From positions 140,905 to 204,904 of the IMG/VR virus record IMGVR_UViG_3300042391_001376: a stretch of DNA of 64,000 nt, one strand, 5' to 3'. A model generated the notes under the pieces. The model was given only the letters and a program-made list of their open reading frames with translations, was not told where the DNA came from and did not search any database. A program made the translations under genes and the position numbers. Shown here piece after piece: positions 6,225 through 63,443 of this stretch; the stretch's first letter is position 1, and each line of letters starts with the position of its first letter.

Positions 6225-6268
6225 AGAAACTCCTAATCTAATACTTAATATTAATAGTAATGACTCAG

Positions 6269-7684
6269 TTATGTGGTTTTTACTTTTTTAGCTGGTTTAA
6301 TAACTGTAAAGTGAAAGTTGTCATCCAAATAGTCTAAAGTAAATGTTGTACCTTTAGGAACTGATGTATTGACTATAGTCTTGGCTAATGAGGTTTCTAT
6401 CTTATCTCTACGAACTTGAGCCAATCCTCTTGCCCCCTTGACAGTATCAATTCCTCTGTCAATCAAACCATTGATAACATTTTGATTATATTCAATATTA
6501 AAACCTTTTTTGTTTAATTTGTCAGAAATTATTCGCATTTCTAATTCAGCTATTCTTTCGCAGTCAGCTCTAGTTAAATGATTAAACACAACAACTTTAT
6601 CAATTCTATTTAATAATTCAGGTCTAAAGTATTTTCTTGCTGCGTCCATCGTATTTCTTTCAACCATAGACTTTAGCGGAATAGCGGATGTGGACCCCTG
6701 ATAATTTACATTCTTATTAAAACCTGTTCCAGTGCCAATCATATGATCTACTGTTTTTTCGTTACCAAGATTAGTTGTTAATATTATTATCGTATTTCTA
6801 AAGTCTACTTTTTCACCTTTGCCATCAGTAATAACTCCTTCGTCAAATACTCTTAAAAATGTATTCCAAATATCTGGATGAGCTTTTTCTACTTCATCTA
6901 TCAACACTACTGAGTTAGGATTTTTCTGGATCTGGTTAACCAACTGTCCACCCTCATCATGGCCGACATACCCTGGCGGTGAACCTATTAGCTTTTGGTT
7001 CTCATGTTTTTGTTGGAATTCACCACAATCTATTCTTACCATCGGATAATCTAATGTAAATAAATATTCATGCAACGTTCTTGCTAGATGCGTCTTACCT
7101 ACGCCTGAAGCGCCGGCAAACATAAAAACACCTAATGGTCTATTAGAATCATTTAAGCCAGCTTGAGATCTAATCAATGCTTCGCAAATGGATTCTACTG
7201 CTTCGTCTTGGCCGATAATACTATTCTTAAGATGATGTTCTAATCCAAGAAACTTTTGTTTACTTATCTTCTTGGCAGTTTGTACTGCTTTATCTTGCCC
7301 CTTAGAACTTTTCTTGTCTTTTACTTTACTGAGTATATTTTTTAGTTCTTCAAAGTTTCTATCTGTAGATAGATCATATTCTTCAGCACCAAATGAATAA
7401 GCAATAGCAACCCAGTAATCTATGTCCAAACCAGGGTTTAGCATTACACATCCCGTATACAAGGCTTCTACGCATCTTTCTGCATCTGGTCTAGACATCA
7501 ACCCCAATGCTTGGGATATTTCTGTTTTTAAATTAAAAATTACATATTGAAGAACTTTTCTTCTTCGTTCTTTTTCTGTCTTGGCATTCACTTGTGAAAC
7601 AAACGATTCTATTTCTTCTGGTTCTAATACTTTGTATTTAACGTATGCGTTAAGATCCGGAACATATATTTGGTATATCTTCAT
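6269..7684 (-). CDS. Clp-family AAA+ ATPase (ClpA/B/C second-module-only) with phage-specific N-terminal domain
   Basis: IIGQDEAV, RPLGVFMFAGASGVGKT (Walker A), KLIGSPPGYVG, LIDEVEKAHP, FRPELLNRID, GARGL. Confidence 0.92.
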   Translation of the reverse strand: MKIYQIYVPDLNAYVKYKVLEPEEIESFVSQVNAKTEKERRRKVLQYVIFNLKTEISQALGLMSRPDAERCVEALYTGCVMLNPGLDIDYWVAIAYSFGAEEYDLSTDRNFEELKNILSKVKDKKSSKGQDKAVQTAKKISKQKFLGLEHHLKNSIIGQDEAVESICEALIRSQAGLNDSNRPLGVFMFAGASGVGKTHLARTLHEYLFTLDYPMVRIDCGEFQQKHENQKLIGSPPGYVGHDEGGQLVNQIQKNPNSVVLIDEVEKAHPDIWNTFLRVFDEGVITDGKGEKVDFRNTIIILTTNLGNEKTVDHMIGTGTGFNKNVNYQGSTSAIPLKSMVERNTMDAARKYFRPELLNRIDKVVVFNHLTRADCERIAELEMRIISDKLNKKGFNIEYNQNVINGLIDRGIDTVKGARGLAQVRRDKIETSLAKTIVNTSVPKGTTFTLDYLDDNFHFTVIKPAKKVKTT

Positions 7685-7783
7685 TTTGTGCTCCGTTCAT
7701 GTTTTAAAAATTAAGATTCTATATATTAATATAATATATTATTATATATATACATATTATTTATAACATATATGTATATAGTA

Positions 7784-7804
7784 AGGGGGTAGGGGGTAGG
7801 GGGT
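7784..7804 (+). repeat. three tandem AGGGGGT repeats next to a ~70-bp almost pure A/T tract
   Basis: AGGGGGT x3 at 7784-7804, preceded by a TA-rich run at ~7715-7780. Confidence 0.85.
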
Positions 7805-8261: not shown

Positions 8262-9248
8262 ATGGATGAATCAAAAACTTTAGAAGTAATCATCGCTCAA
8301 TTAGAGCGTCAATTTGGTGCCGGATCCGTAATTACTCTCGGGTCTACCAATGTGCAAAAATGGCCTTGTATCCCCACCGGTGCTGCTACGCTAGATAATA
8401 TTCTCGGTATAGGCGGCTTACCTAGAGGGAGAATAGTGGAAATATATGGACCAGAGTCTTCTGGCAAATCCACCATTGCTCTTACTGTTATTACAGAAGC
8501 CCAAAAAATGGGCTTGAAGTGCGCTTATATAGATGCCGAGCATGCTTTAGACCCAATTTACATGACCGCTTTAGGCGTGGATTTAGATAAGTTAATCTTT
8601 TCTCAACCAGATTACGGCGAGCAAGCTTTAGAAATAGTTGACCGTCTTGTACGCTCAGGTGAAGTGGGAGTTGTCGTAATTGACTCTGTTGCTTCACTCA
8701 TTCCAAAAGCAGAGCTAGAAGGTGAGATGGAGTCCGCTCAGATGGGCCTACAAGCTCGTCTAATGGCCAAAGCGATGCGAAAGCTAGTTTCGGCCGCATC
8801 CGAGACAAAAACGCTCCTATTGTTTATAAATCAGTTGCGCAACAAAATTGGTGTTATGTTTGGTAATCCCGAAACCACTCCTGGTGGTATGGCTCTTAAG
8901 TATGCTGCCTCGGTACGCATTGACTTGCGTAAGAAGGAAGATCTTAAGGATAAATCTGGTGAGGCAATAGGAATCAAGGTTAAGGCTAAGATTATTAAAA
9001 ACAAAATGGCTCCTCCACTAAAAATTACAGAATTTGACATTCTTTACGGTAAGGGCGTGGATCAATTTGGCTGCTTGTTTGATCTTGCTTTGGGCCAAGG
9101 TATGTTCACTCAAAAAGGTGCTTGGGTTTATCTTGATGGTGAAAACTTTGCTCAAGGTAGAGACAACGCTGTAGAAAAATTAAAATCTAGAGAAGATCTT
9201 ATTATTAAGATTAAGTCTAACCTAGAGGTTAAATCACCCAATTTATAA
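8262..9248 (+). CDS. recA: RecA recombinase
   Basis: GGLPRGRIVEIYGPESSGKST, DAEHALDP, FINQLR, GNPETTPGG, KNKMAPP. Confidence 0.98.
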   Translation: MDESKTLEVIIAQLERQFGAGSVITLGSTNVQKWPCIPTGAATLDNILGIGGLPRGRIVEIYGPESSGKSTIALTVITEAQKMGLKCAYIDAEHALDPIYMTALGVDLDKLIFSQPDYGEQALEIVDRLVRSGEVGVVVIDSVASLIPKAELEGEMESAQMGLQARLMAKAMRKLVSAASETKTLLLFINQLRNKIGVMFGNPETTPGGMALKYAASVRIDLRKKEDLKDKSGEAIGIKVKAKIIKNKMAPPLKITEFDILYGKGVDQFGCLFDLALGQGMFTQKGAWVYLDGENFAQGRDNAVEKLKSREDLIIKIKSNLEVKSPNL

Positions 9249-12146: not shown

Positions 12147-12233
12147 CAAATCTTTGGGCTTCCCCGCAAGTTCCGCGCAAAAATTATTTTTTTTATTTTT
12201 TAACAGATTACTATAAGAGTATCATCTAGTAGA

Positions 12234-15633: not shown

Positions 15634-16437
15634 ATGAAGCCATTCAATCCAGGGGACAAGGTACGTTCCAAGGCAAAGCCTCATATAACAGGCACTGTAA
15701 AGTGGGTTAGGTTTGAACCCAATGGAGTATCTGTTAATAGGCAAAATTCACGTGGAAAATGGAACTATGTCCAGAAGATACCAAAGGGAGGTTATACCGT
15801 ATCTATTAACTGGGATCCAGTCCCACAACTTGGTTACTACCCAGAGCGTCCTTTGCACGGTCTACAGGGGTCTACCGCAATTGAGTTAGTGCCGCAAGAA
15901 AATGTCAATCAAGAAACAACAAACAACGAAAGGAAAGAAGCCATGTCAAATCAACCAACAACAATTCGGGAGGTAAATCCGATGAAGCAGTGCAAACACC
16001 AAGTCTGGGATTGGAAATTAATTCCAGGACAAGTAAACACAGACTACAAGGCAGTTTATTGTGAACTGTGTGGAGAGCAACTGGCTCAACTTGCACCAAA
16101 GAACAAACCAATGACAGATAAGCAGATAAAGTTTATCCGGTCTTTGTTCTTGGAAGTTAAATCAAACATGACAATTGATGAGCAGGAGTCTTTGACAACA
16201 AAGATGAAAGCACATATCGATGGGACAAATGTACTCACCACCAAGTGGGCATCAGCAGCTATTGACAAGCTTAAGGCATACAAGCCTAAGCCTGTTAAGC
16301 CTGTTCAAGTCATGGAAGAGGATGAGCCATTTGGCAAAGTTGAATGTCATGTATGTGGCACGAAATACCAGCCAGAAGAAATGGGCGGATCAGGCACTGA
16401 AGTATTCACCAACGGATGCATCGCATGTCTGTATTAA
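15634..16437 (+). CDS. multi-module hypothetical protein (SH3-like N-terminus, Zn ribbons, TxKQ helical domain); internal in-frame start at 15982
   Basis: PGDKV, CELC, MTDKQIKFI...ASAAIDKL, CHVC; GGAGGT before 15982. Confidence 0.65.
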   Translation: MKPFNPGDKVRSKAKPHITGTVKWVRFEPNGVSVNRQNSRGKWNYVQKIPKGGYTVSINWDPVPQLGYYPERPLHGLQGSTAIELVPQENVNQETTNNERKEAMSNQPTTIREVNPMKQCKHQVWDWKLIPGQVNTDYKAVYCELCGEQLAQLAPKNKPMTDKQIKFIRSLFLEVKSNMTIDEQESLTTKMKAHIDGTNVLTTKWASAAIDKLKAYKPKPVKPVQVMEEDEPFGKVECHVCGTKYQPEEMGGSGTEVFTNGCIACLY

Positions 16438-16481
16438 ATCAATCAAACAATCAACCAACAACAAATGGGGAGGTAAAACCC

Positions 16482-19157
16482 ATGGAAACACCACAACAAA
16501 AGCTCAATCGTTTAACGACAGAGCCTCAACAGAAAGGAGCAGAAGTGATTGCATTCATGCATGACTTCTTCCATACCATCACCAACGACCCAACAGAGCG
16601 TGAGTCATTGGCCTATTCAACCGTAAAGAAGACGGGCAAACCATTCAAGATGGGGACAACAGTTCGCACTGGTGAGAATGGTGCATACAACCACCATATC
16701 TGGCTTATGCCAATCAACAACAACCCTACTTGGAAGTATGGACTCTTGGAGCACAAGCTTAACAGCCGCGGTAAGAAGTTCAAGCTTAAGATGATCACAA
16801 TCAATGAGCTGAAGCAGTGGATCAGCAAGGACAACGGAGACTTAGATGCACTCATCAAAGAATCCAACTTTGCTTGGGCTAATGCAACACATGCTTTCTT
16901 CTTGAAGATGCGTGAAGACAACAACTGGTCATTGGATGATCTTGGTGTCAGCGTAATCGACATGAAGAAGACATCAAAGCGACTTCAAGAAATCACACGG
17001 TTTACTCAGGTATATCGTTCAAGGTCAATGAAGTCAGTCACCACTAAGGCTTATACGAACGAATGGCTTGAGCAATACTACTCTAGCTATGGATTGAAGT
17101 ATGATCCAGCAGATGAGGTGATGTTCGATGGACCAGCCTTCATGCGCAAATCAGCATTCATCAAAGCTTGTTTCCCTATCAAAGATGCGGAAGTAAGAGG
17201 CAAGATGATTGGTGGTGTACACGGTGACAATCGCACTTGGTTGTTCCGTATGAAAATGGAAGGCTGCATGCTTAAGGGCTTGTTGCACATTGTTGAGGAT
17301 GATGAAATCCCAGCAGACATTGTGTACCATGAATCAATGGAAAAGAAGGAATTGTCCACAACAGATGGTAATTATACATTTGTAGCGTGGCCGATGCCAA
17401 CTCTGTACGAAGTAACGATTGACGATCAATCAATGATCAATAATCCATGGTTGTACACCACTGAACACCTCAAAACTACATGCGACAGTCTTTTGTCTGA
17501 CTTCAAGAAAGAAATCGAAGTGGGCAATATGCCAGAATGGATGACTGTTAGCATGGATGACCAAGAGGATCATGGAGTAGTCAACGAAGACAATGAACTC
17601 CAAGAGTGGCAAGCAAACTACATCAAGTGGCAAAAGGCTGGGTTCTCATTGTATGACAGCTCAAACTTTATTCACATGGCGTACGGTCAGCTTGCTAATC
17701 GCATGAGTGCATCAGTTAAGCGTGGTAACATCTGGTTGCCAATGTTTAACGCATTCATGGCTCCTGTCATTACTCATGAGGCATTGCAAATCATGGGTGG
17801 ACAAGAACTGCCAGAGTCAAAGTCAAATGTTGTATGGTATGACAAGCGCTTCGGTGCAATCATCCCAGGCAACCGCTTTGTTGAGACAGCAGATCTTCAC
17901 GACACATGGGACCAAGATGGTGACATGGCCAGGTTCATCCGCATTAAGTTGTGGAGCTCTTCGCCAGTTGTAACTCTCTATGGGTTGTCACACCAGGAAT
18001 TCAGGGATGGATTTGTTATCCCAGCTGACCTGGAAGTACCAACCACACCAGAAGAAGCAATCGACATGGTTGTCATCATTCGTTCACCAAACGGACCTGG
18101 TGGTTATTCAATCGAGCGTTACGATGCAGAGACAATGCCATTTATGCGTGTAAACGAGGACATGGTACAGGTAATTGACCTTAGCAAAGCAACATTGCCG
18201 ATGAGCACACTGCTTAAAGACACTATTGTTGACACTAAGCTCAATGAAATCCTGAACTCAACACAGTACACCAAGAGGGGATTCACACGGGATAACGCCA
18301 AGGACATGATTGATGCACAACTGCACAACCCTGGGTTTGGTTCATTCTCAAACTTCATGATGGTGCATGCAAGTGTGTTCGGTCCAAGCTACCCAACCTA
18401 CATGCCAGCTAGTGGTAATGACATTATCGATGCAAGCTCTCAGACAGCAAACATTGAGGCATTCCGCTTTATCAGTGGCAGCGTATCAACCATGTGGCAA
18501 TCATTGATCGATGATATGGTCAAACAAGATATCAAGATTGACAGCTACATGATGAGTCGTATCCCTGATCGGTTCAAGCATGAGTTGGAAGGTAATGTCT
18601 ATGATGGACCATTGGCAGAGCTCAGTGAGCACTACATCAAGGTACTCAAGGATGTACGCGAAGAGAAGAAGAACACCATCTATCTCCGCATGCGTTCTGA
18701 GTTAATTCCTCAACTGCAACAGTTAATCCCTACACTGTCAGATCAAACACAGGCTGTCTGTGAAGCATTCAACACCAAGTATATCCACATGTTGCGTGCA
18801 TTTGACGAGCGTAAGGCAGAAGCTAAGGCAGAAGAGACAAAGTGGTCAAGCCGCTACTTCAAGGCATGGAACGCTGTGTATTCTTCAACCGAGTTGGAAG
18901 CCATTGTCAAGATGATGGTCGATGAGATTGAAACGTCCAAGTCACCAACCAAGATGGCTGTTGCTATCTATCGCTGGATGACTGATCCAAAGATGAGCTA
19001 CGAGAGGGTGTATCACGAAGGTCGTGGCGAATACATCAAGGCCAATGCTCATCTGCGTTATGGTCTAGTTGACCGTGTAATGTTCCAAGCCGGCAAGCGT
19101 GGGCAGAAATCAATGATGGATCTGCTTATCCAGGGGCTCAAGGATCTGGGCCTCTAG
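16482..19157 (+). CDS. putative single-subunit two-barrel RNA polymerase, YonO/eukaryotic RdRP-like (paralog 1)
   Basis: KTSKRL, FDG, R...LKG, SMEK, DQDGD (17910-17924), IIRSP, FGSFSN; start set by GGAGGT RBS. Confidence 0.75.
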   Translation: METPQQKLNRLTTEPQQKGAEVIAFMHDFFHTITNDPTERESLAYSTVKKTGKPFKMGTTVRTGENGAYNHHIWLMPINNNPTWKYGLLEHKLNSRGKKFKLKMITINELKQWISKDNGDLDALIKESNFAWANATHAFFLKMREDNNWSLDDLGVSVIDMKKTSKRLQEITRFTQVYRSRSMKSVTTKAYTNEWLEQYYSSYGLKYDPADEVMFDGPAFMRKSAFIKACFPIKDAEVRGKMIGGVHGDNRTWLFRMKMEGCMLKGLLHIVEDDEIPADIVYHESMEKKELSTTDGNYTFVAWPMPTLYEVTIDDQSMINNPWLYTTEHLKTTCDSLLSDFKKEIEVGNMPEWMTVSMDDQEDHGVVNEDNELQEWQANYIKWQKAGFSLYDSSNFIHMAYGQLANRMSASVKRGNIWLPMFNAFMAPVITHEALQIMGGQELPESKSNVVWYDKRFGAIIPGNRFVETADLHDTWDQDGDMARFIRIKLWSSSPVVTLYGLSHQEFRDGFVIPADLEVPTTPEEAIDMVVIIRSPNGPGGYSIERYDAETMPFMRVNEDMVQVIDLSKATLPMSTLLKDTIVDTKLNEILNSTQYTKRGFTRDNAKDMIDAQLHNPGFGSFSNFMMVHASVFGPSYPTYMPASGNDIIDASSQTANIEAFRFISGSVSTMWQSLIDDMVKQDIKIDSYMMSRIPDRFKHELEGNVYDGPLAELSEHYIKVLKDVREEKKNTIYLRMRSELIPQLQQLIPTLSDQTQAVCEAFNTKYIHMLRAFDERKAEAKAEETKWSSRYFKAWNAVYSSTELEAIVKMMVDEIETSKSPTKMAVAIYRWMTDPKMSYERVYHEGRGEYIKANAHLRYGLVDRVMFQAGKRGQKSMMDLLIQGLKDLGL

Positions 19158-28992: not shown

Positions 28993-31626
28993 ATGAACAT
29001 GCCAATATATCAGCCTGCCGTCCGTTTACAAACAATGCACAACGGACCATTGCGAAGCATTAACGATTATCAATTTGGATTCTATGATGTCGGCTTCGGT
29101 CGGCAAGCTCTTCAATATCTTCACGAAGTAGAAGGTCTTGAAAATCCAATATTTAGAATGGCTACTATGCCAATTCCTTCCAATAAGATTGAAGCAAAGA
29201 TTGCAGAAGCATACATCCGTAATCCTAACATCTGCTATTCAATAGTAGATAAAAATAAGATCGTATTAGTACATATCAACGGCAACGATGGTTGGCTTGA
29301 TGTATACAAGAAACTTGGTTATGAAATCCTTAGTGGCGACAAGACAGCTAAGCGACTCAAAACCTTCCACCGTGCAGCATTGTTAAATGCTCACTTCACT
29401 AAAGATGAAATCAATGTCCAGATCGTAGATCCAGATGAATATTCATCTTGGTCATTTGAAGATCCATCCTTTCAAGAATGGGCTACAAAAGAATACCCTA
29501 ATATCGACGTTACAGATCCTAAGGTCATCGAGCGTTTGCTTGATGGCGGTTTCGTAATCTCTCGTAAGTTTATTCAGCGTGCAGCTGAAAACTTACCAGT
29601 ATACGAACCACACAAAACTTTAGATACTAAAGAATATTATTACGACTGGCGTGTTCGTAAGAACTTTATTAAAGATATGATGGAATGCTCTATATTCAAT
29701 ACTCGTATTGTATTCGAAGAGGGTTTCCTCAAGGGCAATGCCATCGTATCTGACAACATGCCAGAAGGTGTAGATATTATCACTACACGCACAAATATAA
29801 AGAACGAAATCAAGTATCACAATGGCTTTCAGTTTCTAGCTGAGCCAGTGGGATCGTATGATTCTGTTCTTACTGACACCCAAACTGTTATTAATCTTCC
29901 TAAACTATTCCCTAACGCTGATCTAGAGTATTGGCTTGACGAAGAATACAAAAAGATCTTTGATCTTGCTGTATCCGACAAGCTACTCACTAACTGGCGT
30001 GCAGTTTACAAGCGTCAGTTCCGCAAAATCCACGAAGCAGAAGACGAAGAAGCATATGCCCGCATGAACTATGTGGGCTATCGTTGGCGTAAGCTTGGCA
30101 TGAAAATCACTGATTCACCATGGTTGTTTGAAACCTTGGCGATCAGTCATGCCCGACCATTTGCCGATTCATCTAAGCCTCGTATACCAGTTCCATGCGC
30201 AATAAGTGAACAGGTTATTCCTGAGTCACTTTCTCGTATGGCTGGCTATGACATCGAAGTAGACCAAGGCAAGATACGACGTATCGAAGAACTTGGTGTA
30301 CACGTAGTTAGTGACCTTGACTGGCTAGAAATGTATGAGAGCCATGGCGGTCACGACGAGGACGACTACTTCAAGCTGTTCTATCGCACCATGCGTGGTG
30401 GCGAATACGACGGCAAGAAGGTAGTTATCATCTGCCGTTCACCCAATGACCTTGGTGAGTATTCAATCTTTGAATACACCGAAGGTGATTGGTCTCCAGT
30501 ATGGCACAACGCTGCTGGTATCCCAACAGAATTTCCAGAAATAAGCGGACGTGACTGGCCAAAGCGTTTAAGTAAAGCTATCTTTGATGGCGACATTACT
30601 TATTCAGGTTTGCCATCTAAATCACTACCTAAAACTAAGCCTGAACAGGCACCCTATACACCTGACGACGTCATTCGAGATATGAATATCGCAATGGCTG
30701 GCGGTCAAATCGGTGGATATGTAAATGCTTGCATGCTTTATTCTTCGGTGATTCACCGTCACCGTCCAATTCAATTGTGCACTTTAGAGACTGCTCTCGA
30801 CAAATGCATTAACCCAGATTCTATAGAAGATGTTATAGCAATTGACAACGAAGCTAAAGCTATTGTTCGTCAAGTTATCGAAAGCAAAACCCCAATCGAT
30901 CAATTCGTTTGGAGTACTCGTGGTTCAGCCCGTTTACTTGAAGAAGATGATGATCTTCTGATAGATGAAAACGGCAAGCTAACCATGATGTCTAAATTAT
31001 GCTATGATAAATTTGCAGAACACACTGCTCGCGTTCGTGAATGGGCACAAAATAATGCCCGTCCATCCGATCCACGCATAGCAGAATTGGGCAATAGCCA
31101 ATTGCAAATGTTCTATCATGCACTACCAATTGTCAACCAGTTCCGCTCAGGCATATGGTCAATTAATACATCTGAAGCAACAGCTGAAAATGGATCTATT
31201 GTACGCAACTCTTGGGAATATTTATATTCCAAACAAGTTGACATCATCAATTCATTTGAACTTGAATCTGATCGTCACGACTTCGTACTTGCACTATATT
31301 CTGTCTGTCTTAATGTGCCAACCAAAGGTGGCAAAATTACAGACCATTATATGATGAACAGATTTGTTTATCCATATCTAGAATCCGCTTTGCAGTATTA
31401 TGGTTTGGGCAAATCTGTCAACTTCCTGATGCAAGAAGATGGTGATGTTAAGATTCTCGAAACATTAGTTACCGAATGGAAGTTTACCGATCCTGAAGGC
31501 AACTCAACTTTATTCAATGATCCAATTGAATTTCAACAAGCTCAGTCTGTTTATTCTAAAGTTCAATTTGTTACAAATTCTGCTTCGTTACTTTCTTCGG
31601 AAGTACGAACTACTTCAAAGTATTAA
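28993..31626 (+). CDS. putative YonO/RdRP-like two-barrel RNA polymerase (paralog 2, variant DEDD loop)
   Basis: KTAKRL, LDGGFVIS, R...FLKG, NIK, RIPVP, GGHDEDDYF (acidic loop 30355-30366), ICRSP, IGGYVN; colinear with 16482..19157. Confidence 0.7.
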   Translation: MNMPIYQPAVRLQTMHNGPLRSINDYQFGFYDVGFGRQALQYLHEVEGLENPIFRMATMPIPSNKIEAKIAEAYIRNPNICYSIVDKNKIVLVHINGNDGWLDVYKKLGYEILSGDKTAKRLKTFHRAALLNAHFTKDEINVQIVDPDEYSSWSFEDPSFQEWATKEYPNIDVTDPKVIERLLDGGFVISRKFIQRAAENLPVYEPHKTLDTKEYYYDWRVRKNFIKDMMECSIFNTRIVFEEGFLKGNAIVSDNMPEGVDIITTRTNIKNEIKYHNGFQFLAEPVGSYDSVLTDTQTVINLPKLFPNADLEYWLDEEYKKIFDLAVSDKLLTNWRAVYKRQFRKIHEAEDEEAYARMNYVGYRWRKLGMKITDSPWLFETLAISHARPFADSSKPRIPVPCAISEQVIPESLSRMAGYDIEVDQGKIRRIEELGVHVVSDLDWLEMYESHGGHDEDDYFKLFYRTMRGGEYDGKKVVIICRSPNDLGEYSIFEYTEGDWSPVWHNAAGIPTEFPEISGRDWPKRLSKAIFDGDITYSGLPSKSLPKTKPEQAPYTPDDVIRDMNIAMAGGQIGGYVNACMLYSSVIHRHRPIQLCTLETALDKCINPDSIEDVIAIDNEAKAIVRQVIESKTPIDQFVWSTRGSARLLEEDDDLLIDENGKLTMMSKLCYDKFAEHTARVREWAQNNARPSDPRIAELGNSQLQMFYHALPIVNQFRSGIWSINTSEATAENGSIVRNSWEYLYSKQVDIINSFELESDRHDFVLALYSVCLNVPTKGGKITDHYMMNRFVYPYLESALQYYGLGKSVNFLMQEDGDVKILETLVTEWKFTDPEGNSTLFNDPIEFQQAQSVYSKVQFVTNSASLLSSEVRTTSKY

Positions 31627-32651: not shown

Positions 32652-34331
32652 ATGACTTTAACTTTAAGACCTTATCAGATAGAAGCACTTGAATCTATTC
32701 AAAATCATCTAGACAAAGGTATAGTTAAACAACTTGTCGTTCTCCCAACTGGAGCCGGCAAGACTGTAATTTTTAGTAATATTCCTCAGACCATAAAAGA
32801 CAGTTTACCTATGCTAGTTTTAGCTCACCGTGGTGAGTTATTAACCCAAGCTAAAGATAAAATTCTTTGGTCTAATCCTCAACTGGATGTTCAGATTGAA
32901 AAAGCTGAAGATACAGCTGATCTATGCGATGTTGTAGTAGCATCTGTACCCACTTTGGGTAGAGCTGATTCTCAAAGAATATTAAAATATCCTAAAGACT
33001 ATTTTAAAACTATTATCATTGATGAAGCACACCACGCTGCTGCTGAAACATACCGTAGAATACTTGATTACTTTACTCCTAAATTTCTATTGGGTGTTAC
33101 AGCAACTCCTCAGAGATCTGACTCTGTTAGATTAACTGATGTATTTGATGAAATCACCTACTATAAAACTATTCAAGACTTGATCCAAGAAGGATACTTA
33201 TGTAGACTTGTTGGCTATAGAATAAAGACCGACACTGACATTTCAGAAGTGGAGACTTCGCATGGCGACTACATGGCATCCCAGTTGGAAGATACTATCA
33301 ATACTCCTACTCGTAACGCTATTGTTGTTAAATCTTATTTTGAGTTTGCGCAGAACAAAAAAGCAGTCGTATTCGCATCCGGTGTTAAGCACGCCAGAGA
33401 CTTGGCCGCATCCTTTGCGCAAAAGCAGATACCTGTACGAGTAATACTTGGAGACACTCCAGATGATGAACGAAAACAAGCACTTGCTGACTTTGCATCT
33501 GGTACTATCAAGGTAATAGTTAACGTTGGCGTACTAACAGAAGGGTTCGATGAGCCTTCTATCGGTGCGATTATACTTGCCCGACCAACACGTTCTTCCC
33601 TACTGTATACACAAATAGTAGGTCGTGGTACTAGACTTTACGAAGGTAAAGACAACTGCATTATCATAGATATTGCTGACACCACTAAAGGCAAGAAGCC
33701 TTTGGGATTACCAACTTTGTTGGGAATGCCACCTGAATTCGACCTGAAGGGTCAAGACCTAGTTGATGTAGCAGAAAAATATAAAGAGCTTGAAGACTAC
33801 TGTCCTGGTGAAGCTGTTCGTGTTTTATCTTTAGATGATATAGAACTAGCTTACAAACGTATCGATCTCTTTATGCCACCACCACCTAACGAAATAGTTC
33901 AAACCTATTCTCGTTTTGTTTGGGCCGAAGTAGCCGAAAATGATTTTCATTTAGGTATCAATCAGGATGAATCTATTAGAATTCATGTTGATGCTTTAGG
34001 CAGATGGACTACCACTCTAAAACAAAAAATAAAAGACGGTTCTAAAGATACTGTGCTTGGTCATCCAGAAGATATGCGTGAAGCATTTGTTCGTACCGAT
34101 AGGTGGATTACAAGTAACAGATCTTATAACCTAAATCTTTTAGATAATACTGCTGCTTGGAGATCTGATTCTCCAACAGATAAACAACACAAGATGCTTA
34201 AGCGCATGGGTATCCCAATCACTGCTGATATGACTAAAGGAACTGCTAGTCAGATTATATCTAAATACTATGAAGCTAATCCCAAGCCTAAATGGCTTGA
34301 AAACAAAATAGCTTCTAAAAAATGGAATTAA
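32652..34331 (+). CDS. superfamily II DEAH helicase (RadD/Irc3-like)
   Basis: LRPYQ, PTGAGKT, DEAHH, TATP, LTEGFDEP, QIVGRGTR. Confidence 0.95.
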   Translation: MTLTLRPYQIEALESIQNHLDKGIVKQLVVLPTGAGKTVIFSNIPQTIKDSLPMLVLAHRGELLTQAKDKILWSNPQLDVQIEKAEDTADLCDVVVASVPTLGRADSQRILKYPKDYFKTIIIDEAHHAAAETYRRILDYFTPKFLLGVTATPQRSDSVRLTDVFDEITYYKTIQDLIQEGYLCRLVGYRIKTDTDISEVETSHGDYMASQLEDTINTPTRNAIVVKSYFEFAQNKKAVVFASGVKHARDLAASFAQKQIPVRVILGDTPDDERKQALADFASGTIKVIVNVGVLTEGFDEPSIGAIILARPTRSSLLYTQIVGRGTRLYEGKDNCIIIDIADTTKGKKPLGLPTLLGMPPEFDLKGQDLVDVAEKYKELEDYCPGEAVRVLSLDDIELAYKRIDLFMPPPPNEIVQTYSRFVWAEVAENDFHLGINQDESIRIHVDALGRWTTTLKQKIKDGSKDTVLGHPEDMREAFVRTDRWITSNRSYNLNLLDNTAAWRSDSPTDKQHKMLKRMGIPITADMTKGTASQIISKYYEANPKPKWLENKIASKKWN

Positions 34332-35072: not shown

Positions 35073-35158
35073 GCCCAGGTGGCGGAACCGGTAGACGCAA
35101 GGGGCTTAAACCCCCTCGATTAGAAATGATCGTACGGGTTCGATCCCCGTCTTGGGCA
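35073..35158 (+). tRNA. tRNA-Leu(TAA)
   Basis: GCCCAGG/CTTGGGC, AGGGG-CTTAAAC-CCCCT, long variable arm. Confidence 0.95.
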
Positions 35159-35178
35159 CAAAAGAACAAAGGAACTCT

Positions 35179-36618
35179 ATGCGGAATAAGAGCCACTATC
35201 TAAAACTGTTGTTAACAACAGCATTAATGTTAACAGTTCTTGTTAACTCAAAAACTAATACAGCTAATGCTGGCGATGTTGCACCAGCTGTTTCAACTGT
35301 TAAGTTTTATCGTAAACTGACCAACTATTATTTGCCCAATTTATCATCTGCAGTCCCAAGAATGGGTGCAGATATAGCTTACAATAATAACTTCAGAGGA
35401 CAAGATTCCTTTATAGTTATTCTTGATACTGGCATTGAAGCTGTCCACTCATTCTTTGGTGGCAGAGTAGCACTTGAAGCTTGCTTCGCCGTCAAATGCC
35501 CCAATGGTCAAATATCTATGGTTGGTTCTGGTGCAGCAGCCCCAATTCATTGGCACGGTACCCATGTTGCAGGCATTGCCGCTGGACTTAACTCATCTAT
35601 TAGAGGTATAGCACCAAGCGCAAAGATCATTGCAGTAAATGTTTTTGCTGCAGATGGTTCTGCTTCAGACTCTGATCTTATTCGCGCATTACAATGGGTT
35701 GATTCTATATCTGATCAATATAATATTGCGGCTGTCAACATGTCTCTTGGTACACCAGGAACATTTAAATCTTCATGCAACTCTTATATACCAGATTTAA
35801 CTTCAATTATTTCTACATTGAAGTCTAAAAATATTGCTACTGTAGTTTCAGCCGGCAACGAAGGCCAGCGTGGAATGAGTTCCCCAGCATGCATTACAGA
35901 CACTGTCAGTGTTGCCGCAACTTACACTGCTGGAGACGGCAGTGACAGAGTTACTAGCTTTAGCAACGTTAATGAATTAACTGATTTATCAGCTCCTGGA
36001 TACAACATAGTGTCTTCCAAACTTATGGGTGCATATGGTGCATCTTCAGGAACATCTATGTCAGCACCTATGGTTGCTGGCGCATTTGCAGTATACCGTT
36101 CTAAGTTTGGCGTACAATCAGTAGATAAAGTAGTATCTGACTTTCAATCTACTGGAATCAACGCAGTAGATGATTACACCAAAATTGTTACAAAAAGAAT
36201 AGATTTTAGATCCCTGTTTTCAACACCTGGATCTACACCCCCACCACCCACCACAACTATTCCCTCACCAACTACAACAACTCCATCACCTACTACCACC
36301 GTACTTGATGAAGATGATGAATCAGAAGACTATTTAAATATTCCTTACATTATAACTTTGAAAAAGTTTGCAACTAGACTATCTTATATTCGATTAGACT
36401 TTACATACAGATATACAAATATACCTGTGTCTAATTTTATTTTAAGGTGCAGATATGCAGACAATAAAATTGTTGATAAAGTTATTAGCAATAGAAACAG
36501 AACAACTAATTCTTACTTTATATCAATATCTTCATTAAATATTCGCTCATGTAGAATGGCCGCAGTATCAACAGATGGTACTGTCGGTCAATTCTCCAAA
36601 TACATATTGGTGAAATAA
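35179..36618 (+). CDS. secreted S8 (subtilisin-like) serine protease
   Basis: LDTG, HGTHVAG, SAGN, GTSMSAP; signal peptide; P/T linker; start moved downstream of the tRNA. Confidence 0.95.
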   Translation: MRNKSHYLKLLLTTALMLTVLVNSKTNTANAGDVAPAVSTVKFYRKLTNYYLPNLSSAVPRMGADIAYNNNFRGQDSFIVILDTGIEAVHSFFGGRVALEACFAVKCPNGQISMVGSGAAAPIHWHGTHVAGIAAGLNSSIRGIAPSAKIIAVNVFAADGSASDSDLIRALQWVDSISDQYNIAAVNMSLGTPGTFKSSCNSYIPDLTSIISTLKSKNIATVVSAGNEGQRGMSSPACITDTVSVAATYTAGDGSDRVTSFSNVNELTDLSAPGYNIVSSKLMGAYGASSGTSMSAPMVAGAFAVYRSKFGVQSVDKVVSDFQSTGINAVDDYTKIVTKRIDFRSLFSTPGSTPPPPTTTIPSPTTTTPSPTTTVLDEDDESEDYLNIPYIITLKKFATRLSYIRLDFTYRYTNIPVSNFILRCRYADNKIVDKVISNRNRTTNSYFISISSLNIRSCRMAAVSTDGTVGQFSKYILVK

Positions 36619-49222: not shown

Positions 49223-50827
49223 ATGTTATTTGATGAAATAAAACTAGGCTATCCAGCTTTATGGCTTAAGACCACTGAATTTTCCAGGGCCGCCGAAAGC
49301 TTAATCTCTTATAATTTTAGAGATTTTTATACTATTGATTTTGAATCTGCTTTTTCTCAGTATGTTGATGGCTCATGGAAGACTGTTCTTATTGAAACAC
49401 TTAATCCAGAAACAAATGAAAGAGTTGCACAGTCAACTTTTGATCCTTCTGTTTCTTTGGATTATCTTATTAATTTAAAGTCTGAAAAACCTGTTACTTT
49501 TATTCTTTCTATTATTGGTAAGCCAGATATGACATTGCCTCCATACATGTCATTTATTGCTTCTTTGAACAGTAAGTACAGAAAGAATTTCTGGGCCGAT
49601 GATGCCAACGCTGGAGCAATACAGATTATATTCTTATCTTCTACTGACGCACCAGAAGAATACGCTCACATGTTTAAGAATGTTGAATTTTCTTATCCAA
49701 ATGCTGAAGAACTATTCACTGTTGTAAACCATATTGACAATGCTTCTGCAGGGCGATTTATAAAACAAGATTCAGTTAAAGATATTGTTCGTTCTGGTTT
49801 AGGTCTTGCTGAAGATCAGTTTGTAGATCTTTGTTTGCGTTCCATTTTGCATCACAACGAAGTTAACCCAAAGTACATATATGATCAAAAGATGGCTAAG
49901 ATTAAACAAGCCGGCATTCTTGAAATCATTAAGCCAACTATATCTTTTGCTAACATTGGTGGCTTAGATAATATTAAAGATATTATTCAAAGAACTAAAC
50001 TTCTTTGGGATAACAGAGAGCAAGCAAAATCTTTTGGCGTTGTACCAATCAGAAGAGTTCTTATGGTGGGCGTTCCAGGCACTGGCAAGTCAGCTATCTG
50101 CCAAGCAACTGCTCATGAACTAGGTCTTGACTTAGCTCGTACTGGAATTAGCCAAGTTATGAATTCTTTTGTTGGCCAGTCAGAGCAGAACATGCGAGCA
50201 GTTTTTCAACAGATTAAGATGATGACTCCACTTTGTGTTTGGATCGACGAGTTTGGTCGAGATCTTTCAGGTGGTGCTTCTTCTGCTTCTGTAGATGCGG
50301 GCACTACTGATCGCGTACACGGCGAATTCTTAACTGGTCTTCAAGAACTTCCAGAAGATACATTTCTTATGTGTGCAGCTAATCAAATAGAGAACCTTCG
50401 TCCCGAGATGCTTCGCGCAGATCGTTTCGATAAAATTGTTTTTGTTGGTCTTCCATCTCTTGAGGAAAGAAAAGATATCTTTAAGATATGCTTGAAGACA
50501 ATTGAAACAGATCACCAATTTGATCTAGATGCCCTAGCTGAAAAAGCAGAATACTTTACTGGCGCAGAAATAACTGCATTGATCAAAGAAGTTAAGTTCT
50601 TTGTAGTTTCATCTGAACTTAGATCTATAAATACTAATGATATTATATCTTATATTCCAAACGTTCGTAATATACTTTGGAACAAGAACAGAGACATGAT
50701 CAAGGGTATGTACCAATACGCCCTTGAACAGTGGGACTGGGCTTCGACACAACAACAAAAAGATGCTAAACTAATATTAGCAGGAAGAAAGTCTAATTCT
50801 GAATCAGAGTTAGCTTGGAAGATTTAA
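49223..50827 (+). CDS. classical-clade AAA ATPase (Ycf46-like)
   Basis: IGGLDNIK, GVPGTGKS, FVGQSE pore loop, WIDE, RADRFD. Confidence 0.92.
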   Translation: MLFDEIKLGYPALWLKTTEFSRAAESLISYNFRDFYTIDFESAFSQYVDGSWKTVLIETLNPETNERVAQSTFDPSVSLDYLINLKSEKPVTFILSIIGKPDMTLPPYMSFIASLNSKYRKNFWADDANAGAIQIIFLSSTDAPEEYAHMFKNVEFSYPNAEELFTVVNHIDNASAGRFIKQDSVKDIVRSGLGLAEDQFVDLCLRSILHHNEVNPKYIYDQKMAKIKQAGILEIIKPTISFANIGGLDNIKDIIQRTKLLWDNREQAKSFGVVPIRRVLMVGVPGTGKSAICQATAHELGLDLARTGISQVMNSFVGQSEQNMRAVFQQIKMMTPLCVWIDEFGRDLSGGASSASVDAGTTDRVHGEFLTGLQELPEDTFLMCAANQIENLRPEMLRADRFDKIVFVGLPSLEERKDIFKICLKTIETDHQFDLDALAEKAEYFTGAEITALIKEVKFFVVSSELRSINTNDIISYIPNVRNILWNKNRDMIKGMYQYALEQWDWASTQQQKDAKLILAGRKSNSESELAWKI

Positions 50828-62303: not shown

Positions 62304-62357
62304 TTTTTCCCTCAGATTATTACTATAGCCAAATGTTAATAATCTAGGAGGTGTACC

Positions 62358-63228: not shown

Positions 63229-63443
63229 AGGAATATAGTATGAATCAAGAAAATTTTTATGACTCTGAAAAACCAGAAGAATATGTCTATGATCCTGAAC
63301 TTATTGACTATGATTTATTCTTTAAAGATTTGTGGAAAAAAGAAGACGACTTTTTAAAGTCTGTGGGCGTCGAGCCAACTAGCTAGTAACTGGTGTATCT
63401 CGTATAGGCAATTACTATAATCCCAGCAAACAGGAGGGATTAT

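What the first reader, a model, noticed from the sequence alone, without database searches (positions are those of the whole stretch)
30340..30450. Paralog 2 has a shortened metal-binding loop (GGHDEDDYF instead of DxDGD)
The Gly between the second and third Asp is missing, while three acidic ligands and the flanking GG and YF remain. It may be an active variant, an enzyme with altered chemistry, or a catalytically dead partner of paralog 1.
Basis: partly seen in the sequence, partly recalled or inferred. Interest (0 to 1): 0.6.

Follow-up and report, generated by a model that had tools for sequence, protein, structure and literature searches.

The report
Phage RNA polymerases with a DxDD site
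The gene is a predicted single-chain "two-barrel" RNA polymerase of a lake-water jumbo phage. Its one-residue-shorter metal-binding loop (DxDD instead of DxDGD) is the conserved norm of a large unannotated phage enzyme family, and the neighbouring DxDGD copy is the derived exception.

Summary
Window 28993-31626 (+) encodes an 877-aa protein with G452-G-H-D455-E-D457-D458-Y-F at 30346-30372. Its paralog at 16416-19157 has HDTWDQDGD.

The interpretation needs inverting.
- **Fold:** AlphaFold models of both proteins (pLDDT 87 and 85) match only two-barrel RNA polymerases: plant RDR2 (Z 12), QDE-1 (Z about 10), phage P23-45-type gp64/gp62 and gp96, and crAss gp66.
- **Conservation:** D-x-D-D is invariant in 121 orthologues (47-98% identity). 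It is also present in all 131 motif-covering representatives out of 409 family clusters.
- **Second copy:** more distant related jumbo phages carry DxDD in their second copy too.
- **Third copy:** a 1635-aa member in this genome's structural gene block also has DxDD.
- **Tree:** rooted with that third lineage, the DxDGD clade sits nested among DxDD lineages. Its Gly is therefore a secondary insertion, and it came with GG→DT and E489→G changes.
- **Reads:** contigs from four independent lake metagenome runs show no indel in the gene.

Sequencing error and gene decay are refuted, and a dead enzyme is unlikely. The best reading is an active polymerase with a contracted Asp triad. Neither Pfam, PHROGs nor the searched literature describes this family. 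Activity, template and metal geometry remain untested.

The parts
28993..31626 (+). Gene of paralog 2 (P0002, 877 aa): predicted single-chain two-barrel polymerase, 'p2-type' lineage.
   Evidence: ORF. AF2 model pLDDT 87.1, pTM 0.84. Foldseek PDB: QDE-1 E 2e-9, RDR2 E 1e-8. VIA-align: RDR2 Z 12.2, QDE-1 Z 9.8-9.9, P74 gp62 Z 9.3; the first unrelated chain has Z 4.7. 187 homologues, all unnamed.
30346..30372 (+). Putative catalytic loop G452-G-H-D455-E-D457-D458-Y-F460, carrying the DxDD triad. It lies between helix 441-450 and strand 459-468.
   Evidence: Sequence. G452, G453, D455, D457, D458 and F460 are invariant in A1. D455, D457 and D458 are invariant in 128 superfamily rows. Block pLDDT is 91. 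The register G-x-D-x-D matches QDE-1 G1005/D1007/D1009 as described in PMC9508822; this equivalence is inferred, not superposed.
30436..30459 (+). R482-S-P-N-D-L-G-E489 motif on the hairpin that follows the catalytic loop. R482 and P484 are invariant across the family. E489 co-varies with the loop type.
   Evidence: DxDD goes with E in 262 of 283 sequences; DxDGD goes with G in 84 of 85. That is one clade and hence one event.
29341..29355 (+). K117-T-A-K120-R121 basic motif, a candidate for the basic residues supplied by the first barrel region.
   Evidence: K120 is invariant; K117 and R121 are kept in at least 90% of 128 rows. The giant paralog family mirrors them with K221, K224 and R225. 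The role is inferred.
29542..29547 (+). D184-G185, a candidate for the fourth, first-barrel acidic residue (QDE-1 D709 equivalent).
   Evidence: G185 is invariant and D184 is kept in 126 of 128 rows. The giant family mirrors them with D384-G385. The QDE-1 role comes from PMC9508822. The equivalence is inferred.
29731..29802 (+). Stretch from K247-G248 to K270: conserved lysines in the beta-rich region 234-285.
   Evidence: K247 is kept in 125 of 128 rows and K270 in 124 of 128. The giant family mirrors them with K469 and K500. Secondary structure.
16416..19157 (+). Gene of paralog 1 (P0001, 913 aa; the start could also be M23 at 16482): same fold, 'p1-type' lineage, derived DxDGD clade.
   Evidence: AF2 model pLDDT 85.4, pTM 0.82. 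VIA-align: RDR2 Z 12.0, QDE-1 Z 10.6, P32 gp64 Z 10.1, gp96 Z 8.5. The 99%-identical orthologue P0123 is 891 aa.
17898..17924 (+). Paralog 1 loop H495-D-T-W-D499-Q-D501-G-D503, the canonical DxDGD.
   Evidence: 60 of 65 relatives have D[QS]DGD. The two most distant ones, P0185 and P0186, have GGWDQDD.
18081..18104 (+). Paralog 1 motif R556-S-P-N-G-P-G-G563. The Glu of the DxDD enzymes is replaced here by Gly.

Best explanation
Paralog 2 is most likely a catalytically active, single-chain two-barrel (double-psi beta-barrel) nucleotide polymerase, probably a DNA-dependent RNA polymerase that transcribes phage genes. The phage is an uncultured 205-kb lake-water jumbo phage.

Its metal site is a contracted aspartate triad, G-G-x-D-x-D-D. 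The first two Asp stand in the same register to the upstream Gly as QDE-1's G1005-x-D1007-x-D1009, whose two Asp bind both catalytic cations. The third Asp, which in QDE-1 binds only cation A, follows directly without the usual Gly.

This DxDD loop is the normal and, within this family, ancestral state. The family is large and unannotated, and three lineages of it occur in this genome:
- the 'p2-type' (this gene);
- the 'p1-type' (paralog 1);
- a 1635-aa member in the structural gene block, a candidate virion-borne enzyme.

Paralog 1 belongs to one nested clade that secondarily inserted a Gly, which regenerated the canonical DxDGD. The same clade changed GG to DT before the loop and lost a conserved Glu (E489 to G) on the adjacent hairpin.

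Shown: the sequence facts, the conservation, the predicted fold, the copy number per genome and the tree topology. Inferred: residue equivalence to QDE-1, catalytic activity, DNA template, and the division of labour among the three enzymes.
For: **Fold.** Models of both paralogs are confident. Their only strong PDB matches are two-barrel RNA polymerases: 19 and 18 top entries, Z up to 12, followed by a drop to Z of about 5.

**Conservation.**
- DxDD is invariant in 121 orthologues.
- The family profile finds 409 clusters at E<=1e-3. All 131 of the best 150 that cover the motif have DxDD.
- Asp codons vary synonymously.

**Related genomes.**
- All complete or DTR records searched, except the possibly chimeric G010, hold two members 10-16 kb apart.
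- In G004, G006/G015, G007, G008 and G009 both members are DxDD.

**Third member.**
- P0370 has LGGFDLDD plus RQPSGPEE.
- hhalign gives probability 97.8%, E 8e-13.
- 112 of 113 of its homologues keep DxDD.

**Tree.** The DxDGD rows form one clade (99-100 SH-aLRT) nested five nodes inside the p1-type clade when the tree is rooted with the giant lineage.

**No other RNA polymerase.** No hit for PF00623, PF00562, PF05183 or sigma70_r2. PF00940 also gave none, but its control did not ring.

**Replication.** A DnaE-type polymerase is present, so the two-barrel genes are not needed as the replicase.

**Reads.** Four independent runs show no indel.

**Literature.** The Asp triad is catalytic in QDE-1 and YonO (PMC9508822; PMC5467207).
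Against: - No activity data exist for any DxDD enzyme, and none was found in the searched literature.
- The link to known polymerases is structural only. Pfam, PHROGs and PDB sequence or profile searches find nothing.
- I could not obtain model coordinates. The position of D455/D457/D458 relative to QDE-1 D1007/D1009/D1011 and the Mg2+ geometry are therefore not verified.
- No RNA run holds the gene, so expression is not shown.
- Template type (DNA or RNA) and product are unknown.
- The trees used a quick search under LG+G4, and some internal forks on the path have support of only 63-70.
Confidence: 0.7

Rival explanations
1. The enzyme is active but has a different role or chemistry. One of the two-barrel paralogs might act as the replicative primase for the phage's DnaE-type polymerase. 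Alternatively it might be an RNA-dependent enzyme like QDE-1 or the RDRs, with the contracted loop tuning metal or substrate use.
For: - No Toprim_2, Toprim_4 or Prim-Pol primase domain was found in eight related genomes, although all eight encode DnaE.
- The closest solved structures are RNA-dependent or dual-template enzymes.
- Three paralogs per genome leave room for specialisation.
Against: - Only three primase families were tested, and host DnaG could serve.
- Characterised phage members of this clade (YonO, P23-45 gp64 and gp96, crAss gp66) are DNA-dependent transcriptases.
- No other RNA polymerase or sigma factor was found, so transcription is the unmet need.
Confidence: 0.15
2. Paralog 2 is a catalytically dead pseudo-enzyme that serves as a structural or regulatory partner of the DxDGD paralog 1.
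For: - The two genes always co-occur about 10-16 kb apart on the same strand.
- QDE-1 works as a dimer (PMC9508822).
- The loop departs from the signature regarded as universal.
Against: - All family-invariant residues are intact in paralog 2.
- The three Asp are invariant through synonymous codon turnover.
- In five related genomes both copies are DxDD and no DxDGD copy is present.
- DxDD is the majority state across 409 clusters.
- No binding test was run.
Confidence: 0.05
3. The conserved D-x-D-D is not the metal site at all. The fold match misleads, and the family has some other function.
For: - There is no sequence-level link to any characterised polymerase.
- The whole-chain alignments to PDB entries have rmsd of 5-7.5 Å.
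Against: - The top 18-19 structural matches are exclusively two-barrel polymerases, for two independently modelled paralogs.
- The only invariant acidic cluster lies on a helix-loop-strand element, as expected for the second barrel.
- In one clade the loop is the exact canonical DxDGD.
- Conserved basic motifs and a DG acid lie upstream at a spacing similar to QDE-1 D709-D1007: 271 and 261 residues against 298.
Confidence: 0.05
4. The missing Gly is a sequencing or assembly error, or a sign of a decaying gene.
For: None found.
Against: - The frame is intact for 877 aa.
- Contigs from four independent runs show no indel.
- 121 orthologues and hundreds of relatives share the same loop length.
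Confidence: 0.01

Closest known systems
Eukaryotic RNAi polymerases: Neurospora QDE-1 (2J7N, 7Y7P-T) and plant RDR2 (7W82, 7EU1)
   Same: - They are the best structural matches over about 560-610 aligned residues (Z 9.8-12.2).
- Both barrels lie in a single chain.
- The Asp loop is preceded by Gly in the same G-x-D-x-D register.
   Different: - There is no detectable sequence similarity; Pfam RdRP PF05183 is not matched.
- The third Asp follows the second directly (DxDD) instead of DxDGD.
- These proteins come from a dsDNA phage, so DNA-templated transcription is the more likely role.
Thermus phage P23-45-type gp64 (solved as P32 gp64 and P74 gp62) non-virion RNAP and P23-45 gp96 tape-measure-fused virion RNAP (8F72, 8F5M, 8H2M/N)
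   Same: - They are phage single-chain two-barrel RNAPs with structural Z of 7.3-10.1.
- That phage also carries paralogous polymerases that arose by duplication. One is embedded in a giant virion protein (PMC10770324).
   Different: - The Thermus enzymes carry DxDxD or DFDGD.
- There is no sequence-level similarity.
- Here there are three lineages per genome, and virion association of the giant one is only inferred from gene position.
Bacillus SPbeta prophage YonO
   Same: It is a roughly 100-kDa single-chain phage RNAP of the RdRP-like clade. Its Asp triad has been shown to be catalytic (PMC5467207).
   Different: YonO keeps the canonical triad. It was not compared directly here.
crAss-like phage phi14:2 gp66 virion RNAP (6VR4)
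   Same: It is a two-barrel fold inside a giant virion-packaged protein, which is an analogy for the 1635-aa third paralog.
   Different: The structural match is weak (Z 4.8-5.0). The loop there is described as DxDxD in the literature I recall; this was not checked here.
Virion and non-virion multisubunit RNAP sets of phiKZ and AR9 jumbo phages
   Same: They are jumbo phages that carry several of their own two-barrel RNAPs for different temporal gene classes (PMC7598289, PMC7824862).
   Different: Those enzymes are split beta/beta' multisubunit assemblies. Here PF00623 and PF00562 are absent and each enzyme is a single chain.

Membership tests
Two-barrel (DPBB) polymerase superfamily, single-chain RdRP/YonO/gp64-like clade | Overall fold with two barrels in one chain, superposable on solved members | tested here: met
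   The predicted models of P0002 and P0001 match RDR2 (Z 12.2 and 12.0), QDE-1 (9.9 and 10.6), gp62/gp64 (9.3 and 10.1) and gp96 (7.3 and 8.5). Unrelated chains start at Z 4.7-5.5. These are predicted structures, not solved ones.
Two-barrel (DPBB) polymerase superfamily, single-chain RdRP/YonO/gp64-like clade | DxDxD (DbDGD) aspartate triad in the second barrel | tested here: not met
   P0002 has D455-E-D457-D458. Three Asp are present, but the spacing is one residue short. P0001 meets the feature with D499-Q-D-G-D503.
Two-barrel (DPBB) polymerase superfamily, single-chain RdRP/YonO/gp64-like clade | Conserved basic residues and one acidic residue contributed by the first barrel | tested here: inconclusive
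   K117, K120, R121, D184, G185, K247 and K270 are invariant or nearly so, and they recur in all three lineages. Residue-level superposition on QDE-1 (D709) could not be done.
Two-barrel (DPBB) polymerase superfamily, single-chain RdRP/YonO/gp64-like clade | Template-dependent, metal-dependent NTP polymerisation | not testable with these tools
   This needs a biochemical assay.
Pfam RdRP (PF05183, eukaryotic-type RNA-dependent RNA polymerase) | Match to the family HMM above the gathering score | tested here: not met
   There was no Pfam hit at E<=1 for P0002 and none to PF05183 for P0001. There was no PF05183 hit in the whole genome.
Multisubunit RNAP beta'/beta (PF00623, PF00562) | Match to the family HMMs | tested here: not met
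   The controls rang in 14 of 14 genomes.
T7-like single-subunit RNAP (PF00940) | Match to the family HMM | tested here: not met
   The Pfam-A scan of both proteins found none. The genome-wide search also found none, but its control did not ring.
P23-45 gp64-like phage non-virion RNAP | Detectable sequence homology to gp64/gp62 | tested here: not met
   phmmer and profile searches of PDB sequences found no polymerase at E<=10. Only the fold is shared.
YonO-like prophage RNAP | Sequence or profile homology to YonO | not tested
   No YonO sequence was fetched. YonO-type proteins ring PF05183 weakly in the B. subtilis control, whereas these proteins do not.

The most novel reading that the evidence does not exclude
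A whole, so far unannotated family of phage two-barrel RNA polymerases (at least 409 clusters at 50% identity) catalyses RNA synthesis with a contracted DxDD triad. This would break the DxDxD spacing treated as universal for this superfamily. The lake jumbo phages that carry it may run a host-independent, three-polymerase programme: a giant, probably virion-borne DxDD enzyme plus two soluble paralogs, one of which may double as the primase for the phage's DnaE. One clade re-evolved DxDGD together with compensating changes, giving a natural before-and-after pair for studying the geometry of the site.
Probability: 0.35. Interest if true: 0.78.

Novelty: new variant of a known kind. Interest (0 to 1): 0.62.

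Why it matters
The DxDxD or DbDGD triad is the one signature shared by every two-barrel polymerase family. It is also what people search for when looking for hidden RNA polymerases in phage genomes (PMC10770324).

A large family in which DxDD is the invariant rule would have several consequences:
- It would show that the third metal ligand tolerates a different backbone spacing.
- It would explain why these enzymes are missing from Pfam and PHROGs annotation.
- It would add a transcription apparatus to a widespread group of freshwater jumbo phages that otherwise appear to have none.

The nested DxDGD clade, with its coupled GG→DT and E→G changes, offers a ready-made comparative system for studying metal-site geometry.

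Tried and rejected
**Searches that found nothing**
- Pfam and PHROGs scans of P0001, P0002 and P0370 gave no relevant family.
- PDB sequence search with single proteins and with the superfamily profile A2 gave only chance helical hits.
- tblastn of both paralogs against 50,697 INPHARED phage records gave no match.
- Cluster look-up for names returned only 'hypothetical protein'.
- ESM Atlas searches by features and by shape gave weak leads only: an RdRP-bearing cluster at score 0.84 and one unnamed cluster at TM 0.44.
- Literature searches for DxDD in two-barrel polymerases found no paper.

**Idea rejected**
- I considered that paralog 1 is split by a frameshift from an upstream ORF, because some orthologues are about 1110-1130 aa. 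tblastn of P0124 matches only its residues 210-1117 in the window. The extra N-terminal domain is simply absent here.

**Technical failures and weak results**
- MAFFT inside treekit timed out. I replaced it with hmmalign.
- hhalign of A1 against A5 gave only 44% probability. The more diverse A4 gave 97.8%.
- Context look-ups for the distant members P0220 and P0240 returned only short contigs.

**Not done**
- Model coordinates are not exposed, so there was no superposition and no Mg2+ geometry.
- No complex prediction was run, because I make no binding claim.
- No RNA run holds the gene, so expression was not assessed.

- No other genetic code was used.
- Read laying was given 2,634 letters.
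Full report
**1. Observation**

The + strand ORF 28993-31626 encodes 877 residues (P0002). Residues 450-460 read S-H-G-G-H-D-E-D-D-Y-F, with G452 at nt 30346 and F460 ending at 30372.

The 'paralog 1' it refers to is ORF 16416-19157 (913 aa, P0001). Its loop is H-D-T-W-D-Q-D-G-D, again followed by RSPN.

BLASTP aligns the two proteins at 22% identity over about 298 residues (E 7e-6), with the loops in register. HMM and MAFFT alignments put a single gap at the Gly.

The observation therefore stands. The one exception is that the GG and YF flanks are not shared with paralog 1.

**2. Not an error and not decay**

- The word-index search found 187 homologues of P0002. The best 120 are 47-98% identical and 830-877 aa long.
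- Together with the query, all 121 have G-G-[HMN]-D-x-D-D-[YF]-F. D455, D457 and D458 are invariant, while position 456 varies (E/Q/A/H/G).
- Among 31 distinct DNA versions of the motif in IMG/VR loci, each Asp codon alternates between GAC and GAT.
- The exact gene is held by at least 20 lake-water or freshwater metagenome runs.
- Contigs of four runs from four studies cover the site. They show strain SNPs elsewhere, but no indel in the gene and no change between 30258 and 30519.

**3. What the protein is**

Pfam, PHROGs, PDB sequence search and INPHARED phage records find nothing.

An AlphaFold2 model built on the 121-sequence alignment is confident (pLDDT 87.1, pTM 0.84).
- Foldseek against the PDB returns QDE-1 (E 2e-9), plant RDR2, then Thermus-phage gp64/gp62 RNAP.
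- VIA-align gives RDR2 Z 12.2, QDE-1 Z 9.8-9.9, P74 gp62 Z 9.3, P23-45 gp96 Z 7.3 and crAss gp66 Z 5.0. The next, unrelated, entry has Z 4.7.

Paralog 1, modelled independently (pLDDT 85.4), gives the same list: RDR2 12.0, QDE-1 10.6, P32 gp64 10.1 and gp96 8.5.

Both are therefore predicted single-chain two-barrel polymerases of the RdRP/phage clade defined in PMC10770324.

In BFVD, the orthologue and a p1-type relative are 'uncharacterized protein [uncultured Caudovirales phage]'.

**4. The loop in its family**

A profile of the orthologues, searched against 1.84 billion cluster representatives, finds 409 clusters at E<=1e-3. Of the best 150, 131 cover the motif and all 131 have D-x-D-D, mostly preceded by HGG. 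Position x is L/Q/G/M/H/F/A/E.

In a 128-row superfamily alignment the invariant columns are K120, G185, D455, D457, D458, R482 and P484. K117, R121, D184, K247, G248, K270, Q297, G452, G574 and D603 are kept in at least 90% of rows. P0001 keeps all of these except G452.

Relatives of paralog 1 have D[QS]DGD in 60 of 65 cases. The two most distant ones have GGWDQDD.

**5. Related genomes**

The window is the last 64 kb of a 204,904-bp IMG/VR record with 97% completeness.

Forty-five related viral loci were fetched. A family profile was then run over 18 whole records.
- Every complete or DTR record except G010 holds exactly two members on the same strand, 10-16 kb apart.
- Records with a single member are incomplete, or are cut close to the gene.
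- The p2 orthologue always has HGGxDxDD.
- The p1 counterpart has HDTWDQDGD only in G000, G001, G002/G016 and G012.
- In G004, G006/G015, G007, G008 and G009 the p1 counterpart is also DxDD.

**6. A third member**

A sensitive local search of all ORFs in the genome found a 1635-aa protein (genome 75866-80773, minus strand; P0370, locus L103). It lies among giant ORFs in the structural block and matches the family from the DG motif to the RxP motif.
- It reads LGGFDLDD and RQPSGPEE.
- hhalign of the family profile gives 95% probability against the single sequence. Against an alignment of its homologues it gives 97.8%, E 8e-13, over 304 columns.
- 112 of 113 homologues (24-100% identity) keep DxDD.
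- Its invariant residues mirror those of P0002 one for one.

**7. Direction of change**

An IQ-TREE run used 76 sequences under LG+G4 with a quick search, leaving out the motif columns.
- It splits the family into a p1-type clade and a p2-type clade (support 100).
- It recovers all DxDGD rows as one clade (support 100), nested next to the DxDD rows P0185, P0186, P0330 and P0335.

Adding nine giant-lineage sequences as an outgroup puts the root between the p1-type and p2-type clades (supports 99 and 95). The DxDGD clade then lies five nodes deep, and every sister group on the path is DxDD. Two of those forks have support of only 63-70.

DxDD is thus ancestral within this family, and the Gly of paralog 1 is a secondary insertion. 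It came together with GG→DT before the loop and E489→G in the RSPNxxGE hairpin. DxDD goes with E in 262 of 283 sequences, and DxDGD with G in 84 of 85. This is one clade and hence one event.

**8. How it probably works**

In QDE-1, cation A is held by D1007, D1009 and D1011, and cation B by D1007 and D1009. D709 of the first barrel contributes through water, and the carbonyl of G1005 holds a third cation (PMC9508822).

The register G453-x-D455-x-D457 equals G1005-x-D1007-x-D1009. The two Asp that bind both metals therefore keep their spacing, and only the cation-A-specific third Asp moves up by one residue. D184-G185 lies 271 residues upstream (298 in QDE-1) and is the candidate first-barrel acid. 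These equivalences are inferred, because I could not obtain coordinates.

On the enzyme's role:
- The genome has no multisubunit RNAP, Pfam RdRP or sigma-factor match.
- The T7-like search also found nothing, but its control did not ring.
- The genome does have a DnaE-type replicase.
- Characterised phage relatives are DNA-dependent transcriptases.

I therefore take these proteins to be the phage's own transcription enzymes. The giant member is a candidate virion-borne early enzyme, by analogy with P23-45 gp96 and crAss gp66. The two soluble paralogs would serve later gene classes. This division of labour is speculative.

**9. Rivals**

- **Dead partner.** This is contradicted by full conservation of the catalytic constellation and by genomes in which both soluble paralogs are DxDD.
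- **Altered role.** It remains open. No Toprim or Prim-Pol primase was found in eight genomes, so a priming function for one paralog cannot be excluded. The nearest solved structures also use RNA templates.
- **Error or decay.** This is refuted.

**10. Novelty**

The fold and the general mechanism are known. New, as far as the databases and the paper library here show, are three things:
- the contracted triad as the rule of a large family;
- the family's presence in two or three copies per genome in freshwater jumbo phages;
- the secondary re-creation of DxDGD.

I rate it a new variant of a known kind, with interest 0.62.

Noticed in passing
L103 (G000:C1:75866-80773, minus strand; outside the window, about 60 kb before its start): A third, highly diverged family member: a 1635-aa protein (P0370) among giant ORFs of the structural block, carrying LGGFDLDD and RQPSGPEE. 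It has a conserved C-terminal region that includes a hydrophobic stretch. It is a candidate virion-packaged polymerase. Weak hits of the same kind fall inside ORFs of 1475-2073 aa in G004, G010 and G011.
   Followed up: yes
window 6254-6260 (-), 7778-7784 (-), 12208-12214 (+), 62320-62326 (+), 63412-63418 (+), and further sites across the genome: The 7-mer TTACTAT(A/T) occurs 54 times in the genome. Fourteen copies lie within 100 nt upstream of minus-block gene starts, and nine of those begin 36-44 nt before the start codon. It is a candidate phage-specific promoter. No comparable motif was seen for the plus block.
   Followed up: partly
window 16416-16482, and relatives P0124, P0126 and P0133: Paralog-1 orthologues in related phages carry about 210 extra N-terminal residues: a NADAR domain in P0133 (PF08719, E 1e-22) and a weak 2OG-Fe(II) oxygenase match in P0124. 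The window copy lacks this domain and shows no frameshift. Its start is ambiguous: ATG at 16416 overlaps the upstream ORF by 22 nt, and the 99%-identical P0123 starts 22 residues later.
   Followed up: partly
whole genome G000 and seven related records: All eight genomes encode a DnaE-type Pol III alpha (G000:20932-24255, minus strand). None shows a PolA match. In G000 alone, PolB and sigma70_r2 were also searched and not found. No Toprim_2, Toprim_4 or Prim-Pol primase domain was found in any of the eight. How replication is primed is unexplained.
   Followed up: partly
window 30457-30459 (E489) against 18102-18104 (G563): The Glu in RSPNxxGE is kept in 262 of 283 DxDD sequences and is replaced by Gly in 84 of 85 DxDGD sequences. 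The GG→DT change before the loop goes with it. This suggests a functional link between the hairpin and the metal loop.
   Followed up: partly
window about 7753-7778 (genome 148657-148682), in the gap where gene orientation switches from the minus to the plus block: Three tandem copies of ACCCCCT lie next to a TTACTATATA element and a long AT-rich stretch (context printed). This may be a regulatory or origin region.
   Followed up: no
G010 (IMGVR_UViG_3300042868_009074, 267,766 bp; loci L023/L077 and L033/L093): This record holds two different p2-type genes that group with different phages in the tree, and no clear p1-type gene. It may be a chimeric assembly or a join of two related phages.
   Followed up: no
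window 6269-7684 (-), 8262-9248 (+), 32652-34331 (+), 35152-36618 (+), 49223-50827 (+): The neighbouring genes include a ClpB-like AAA_2 ATPase, a full-length RecA, a ResIII/SNF2-type helicase directly downstream of paralog 2, a subtilase and an AAA+ ATPase.
   Followed up: no
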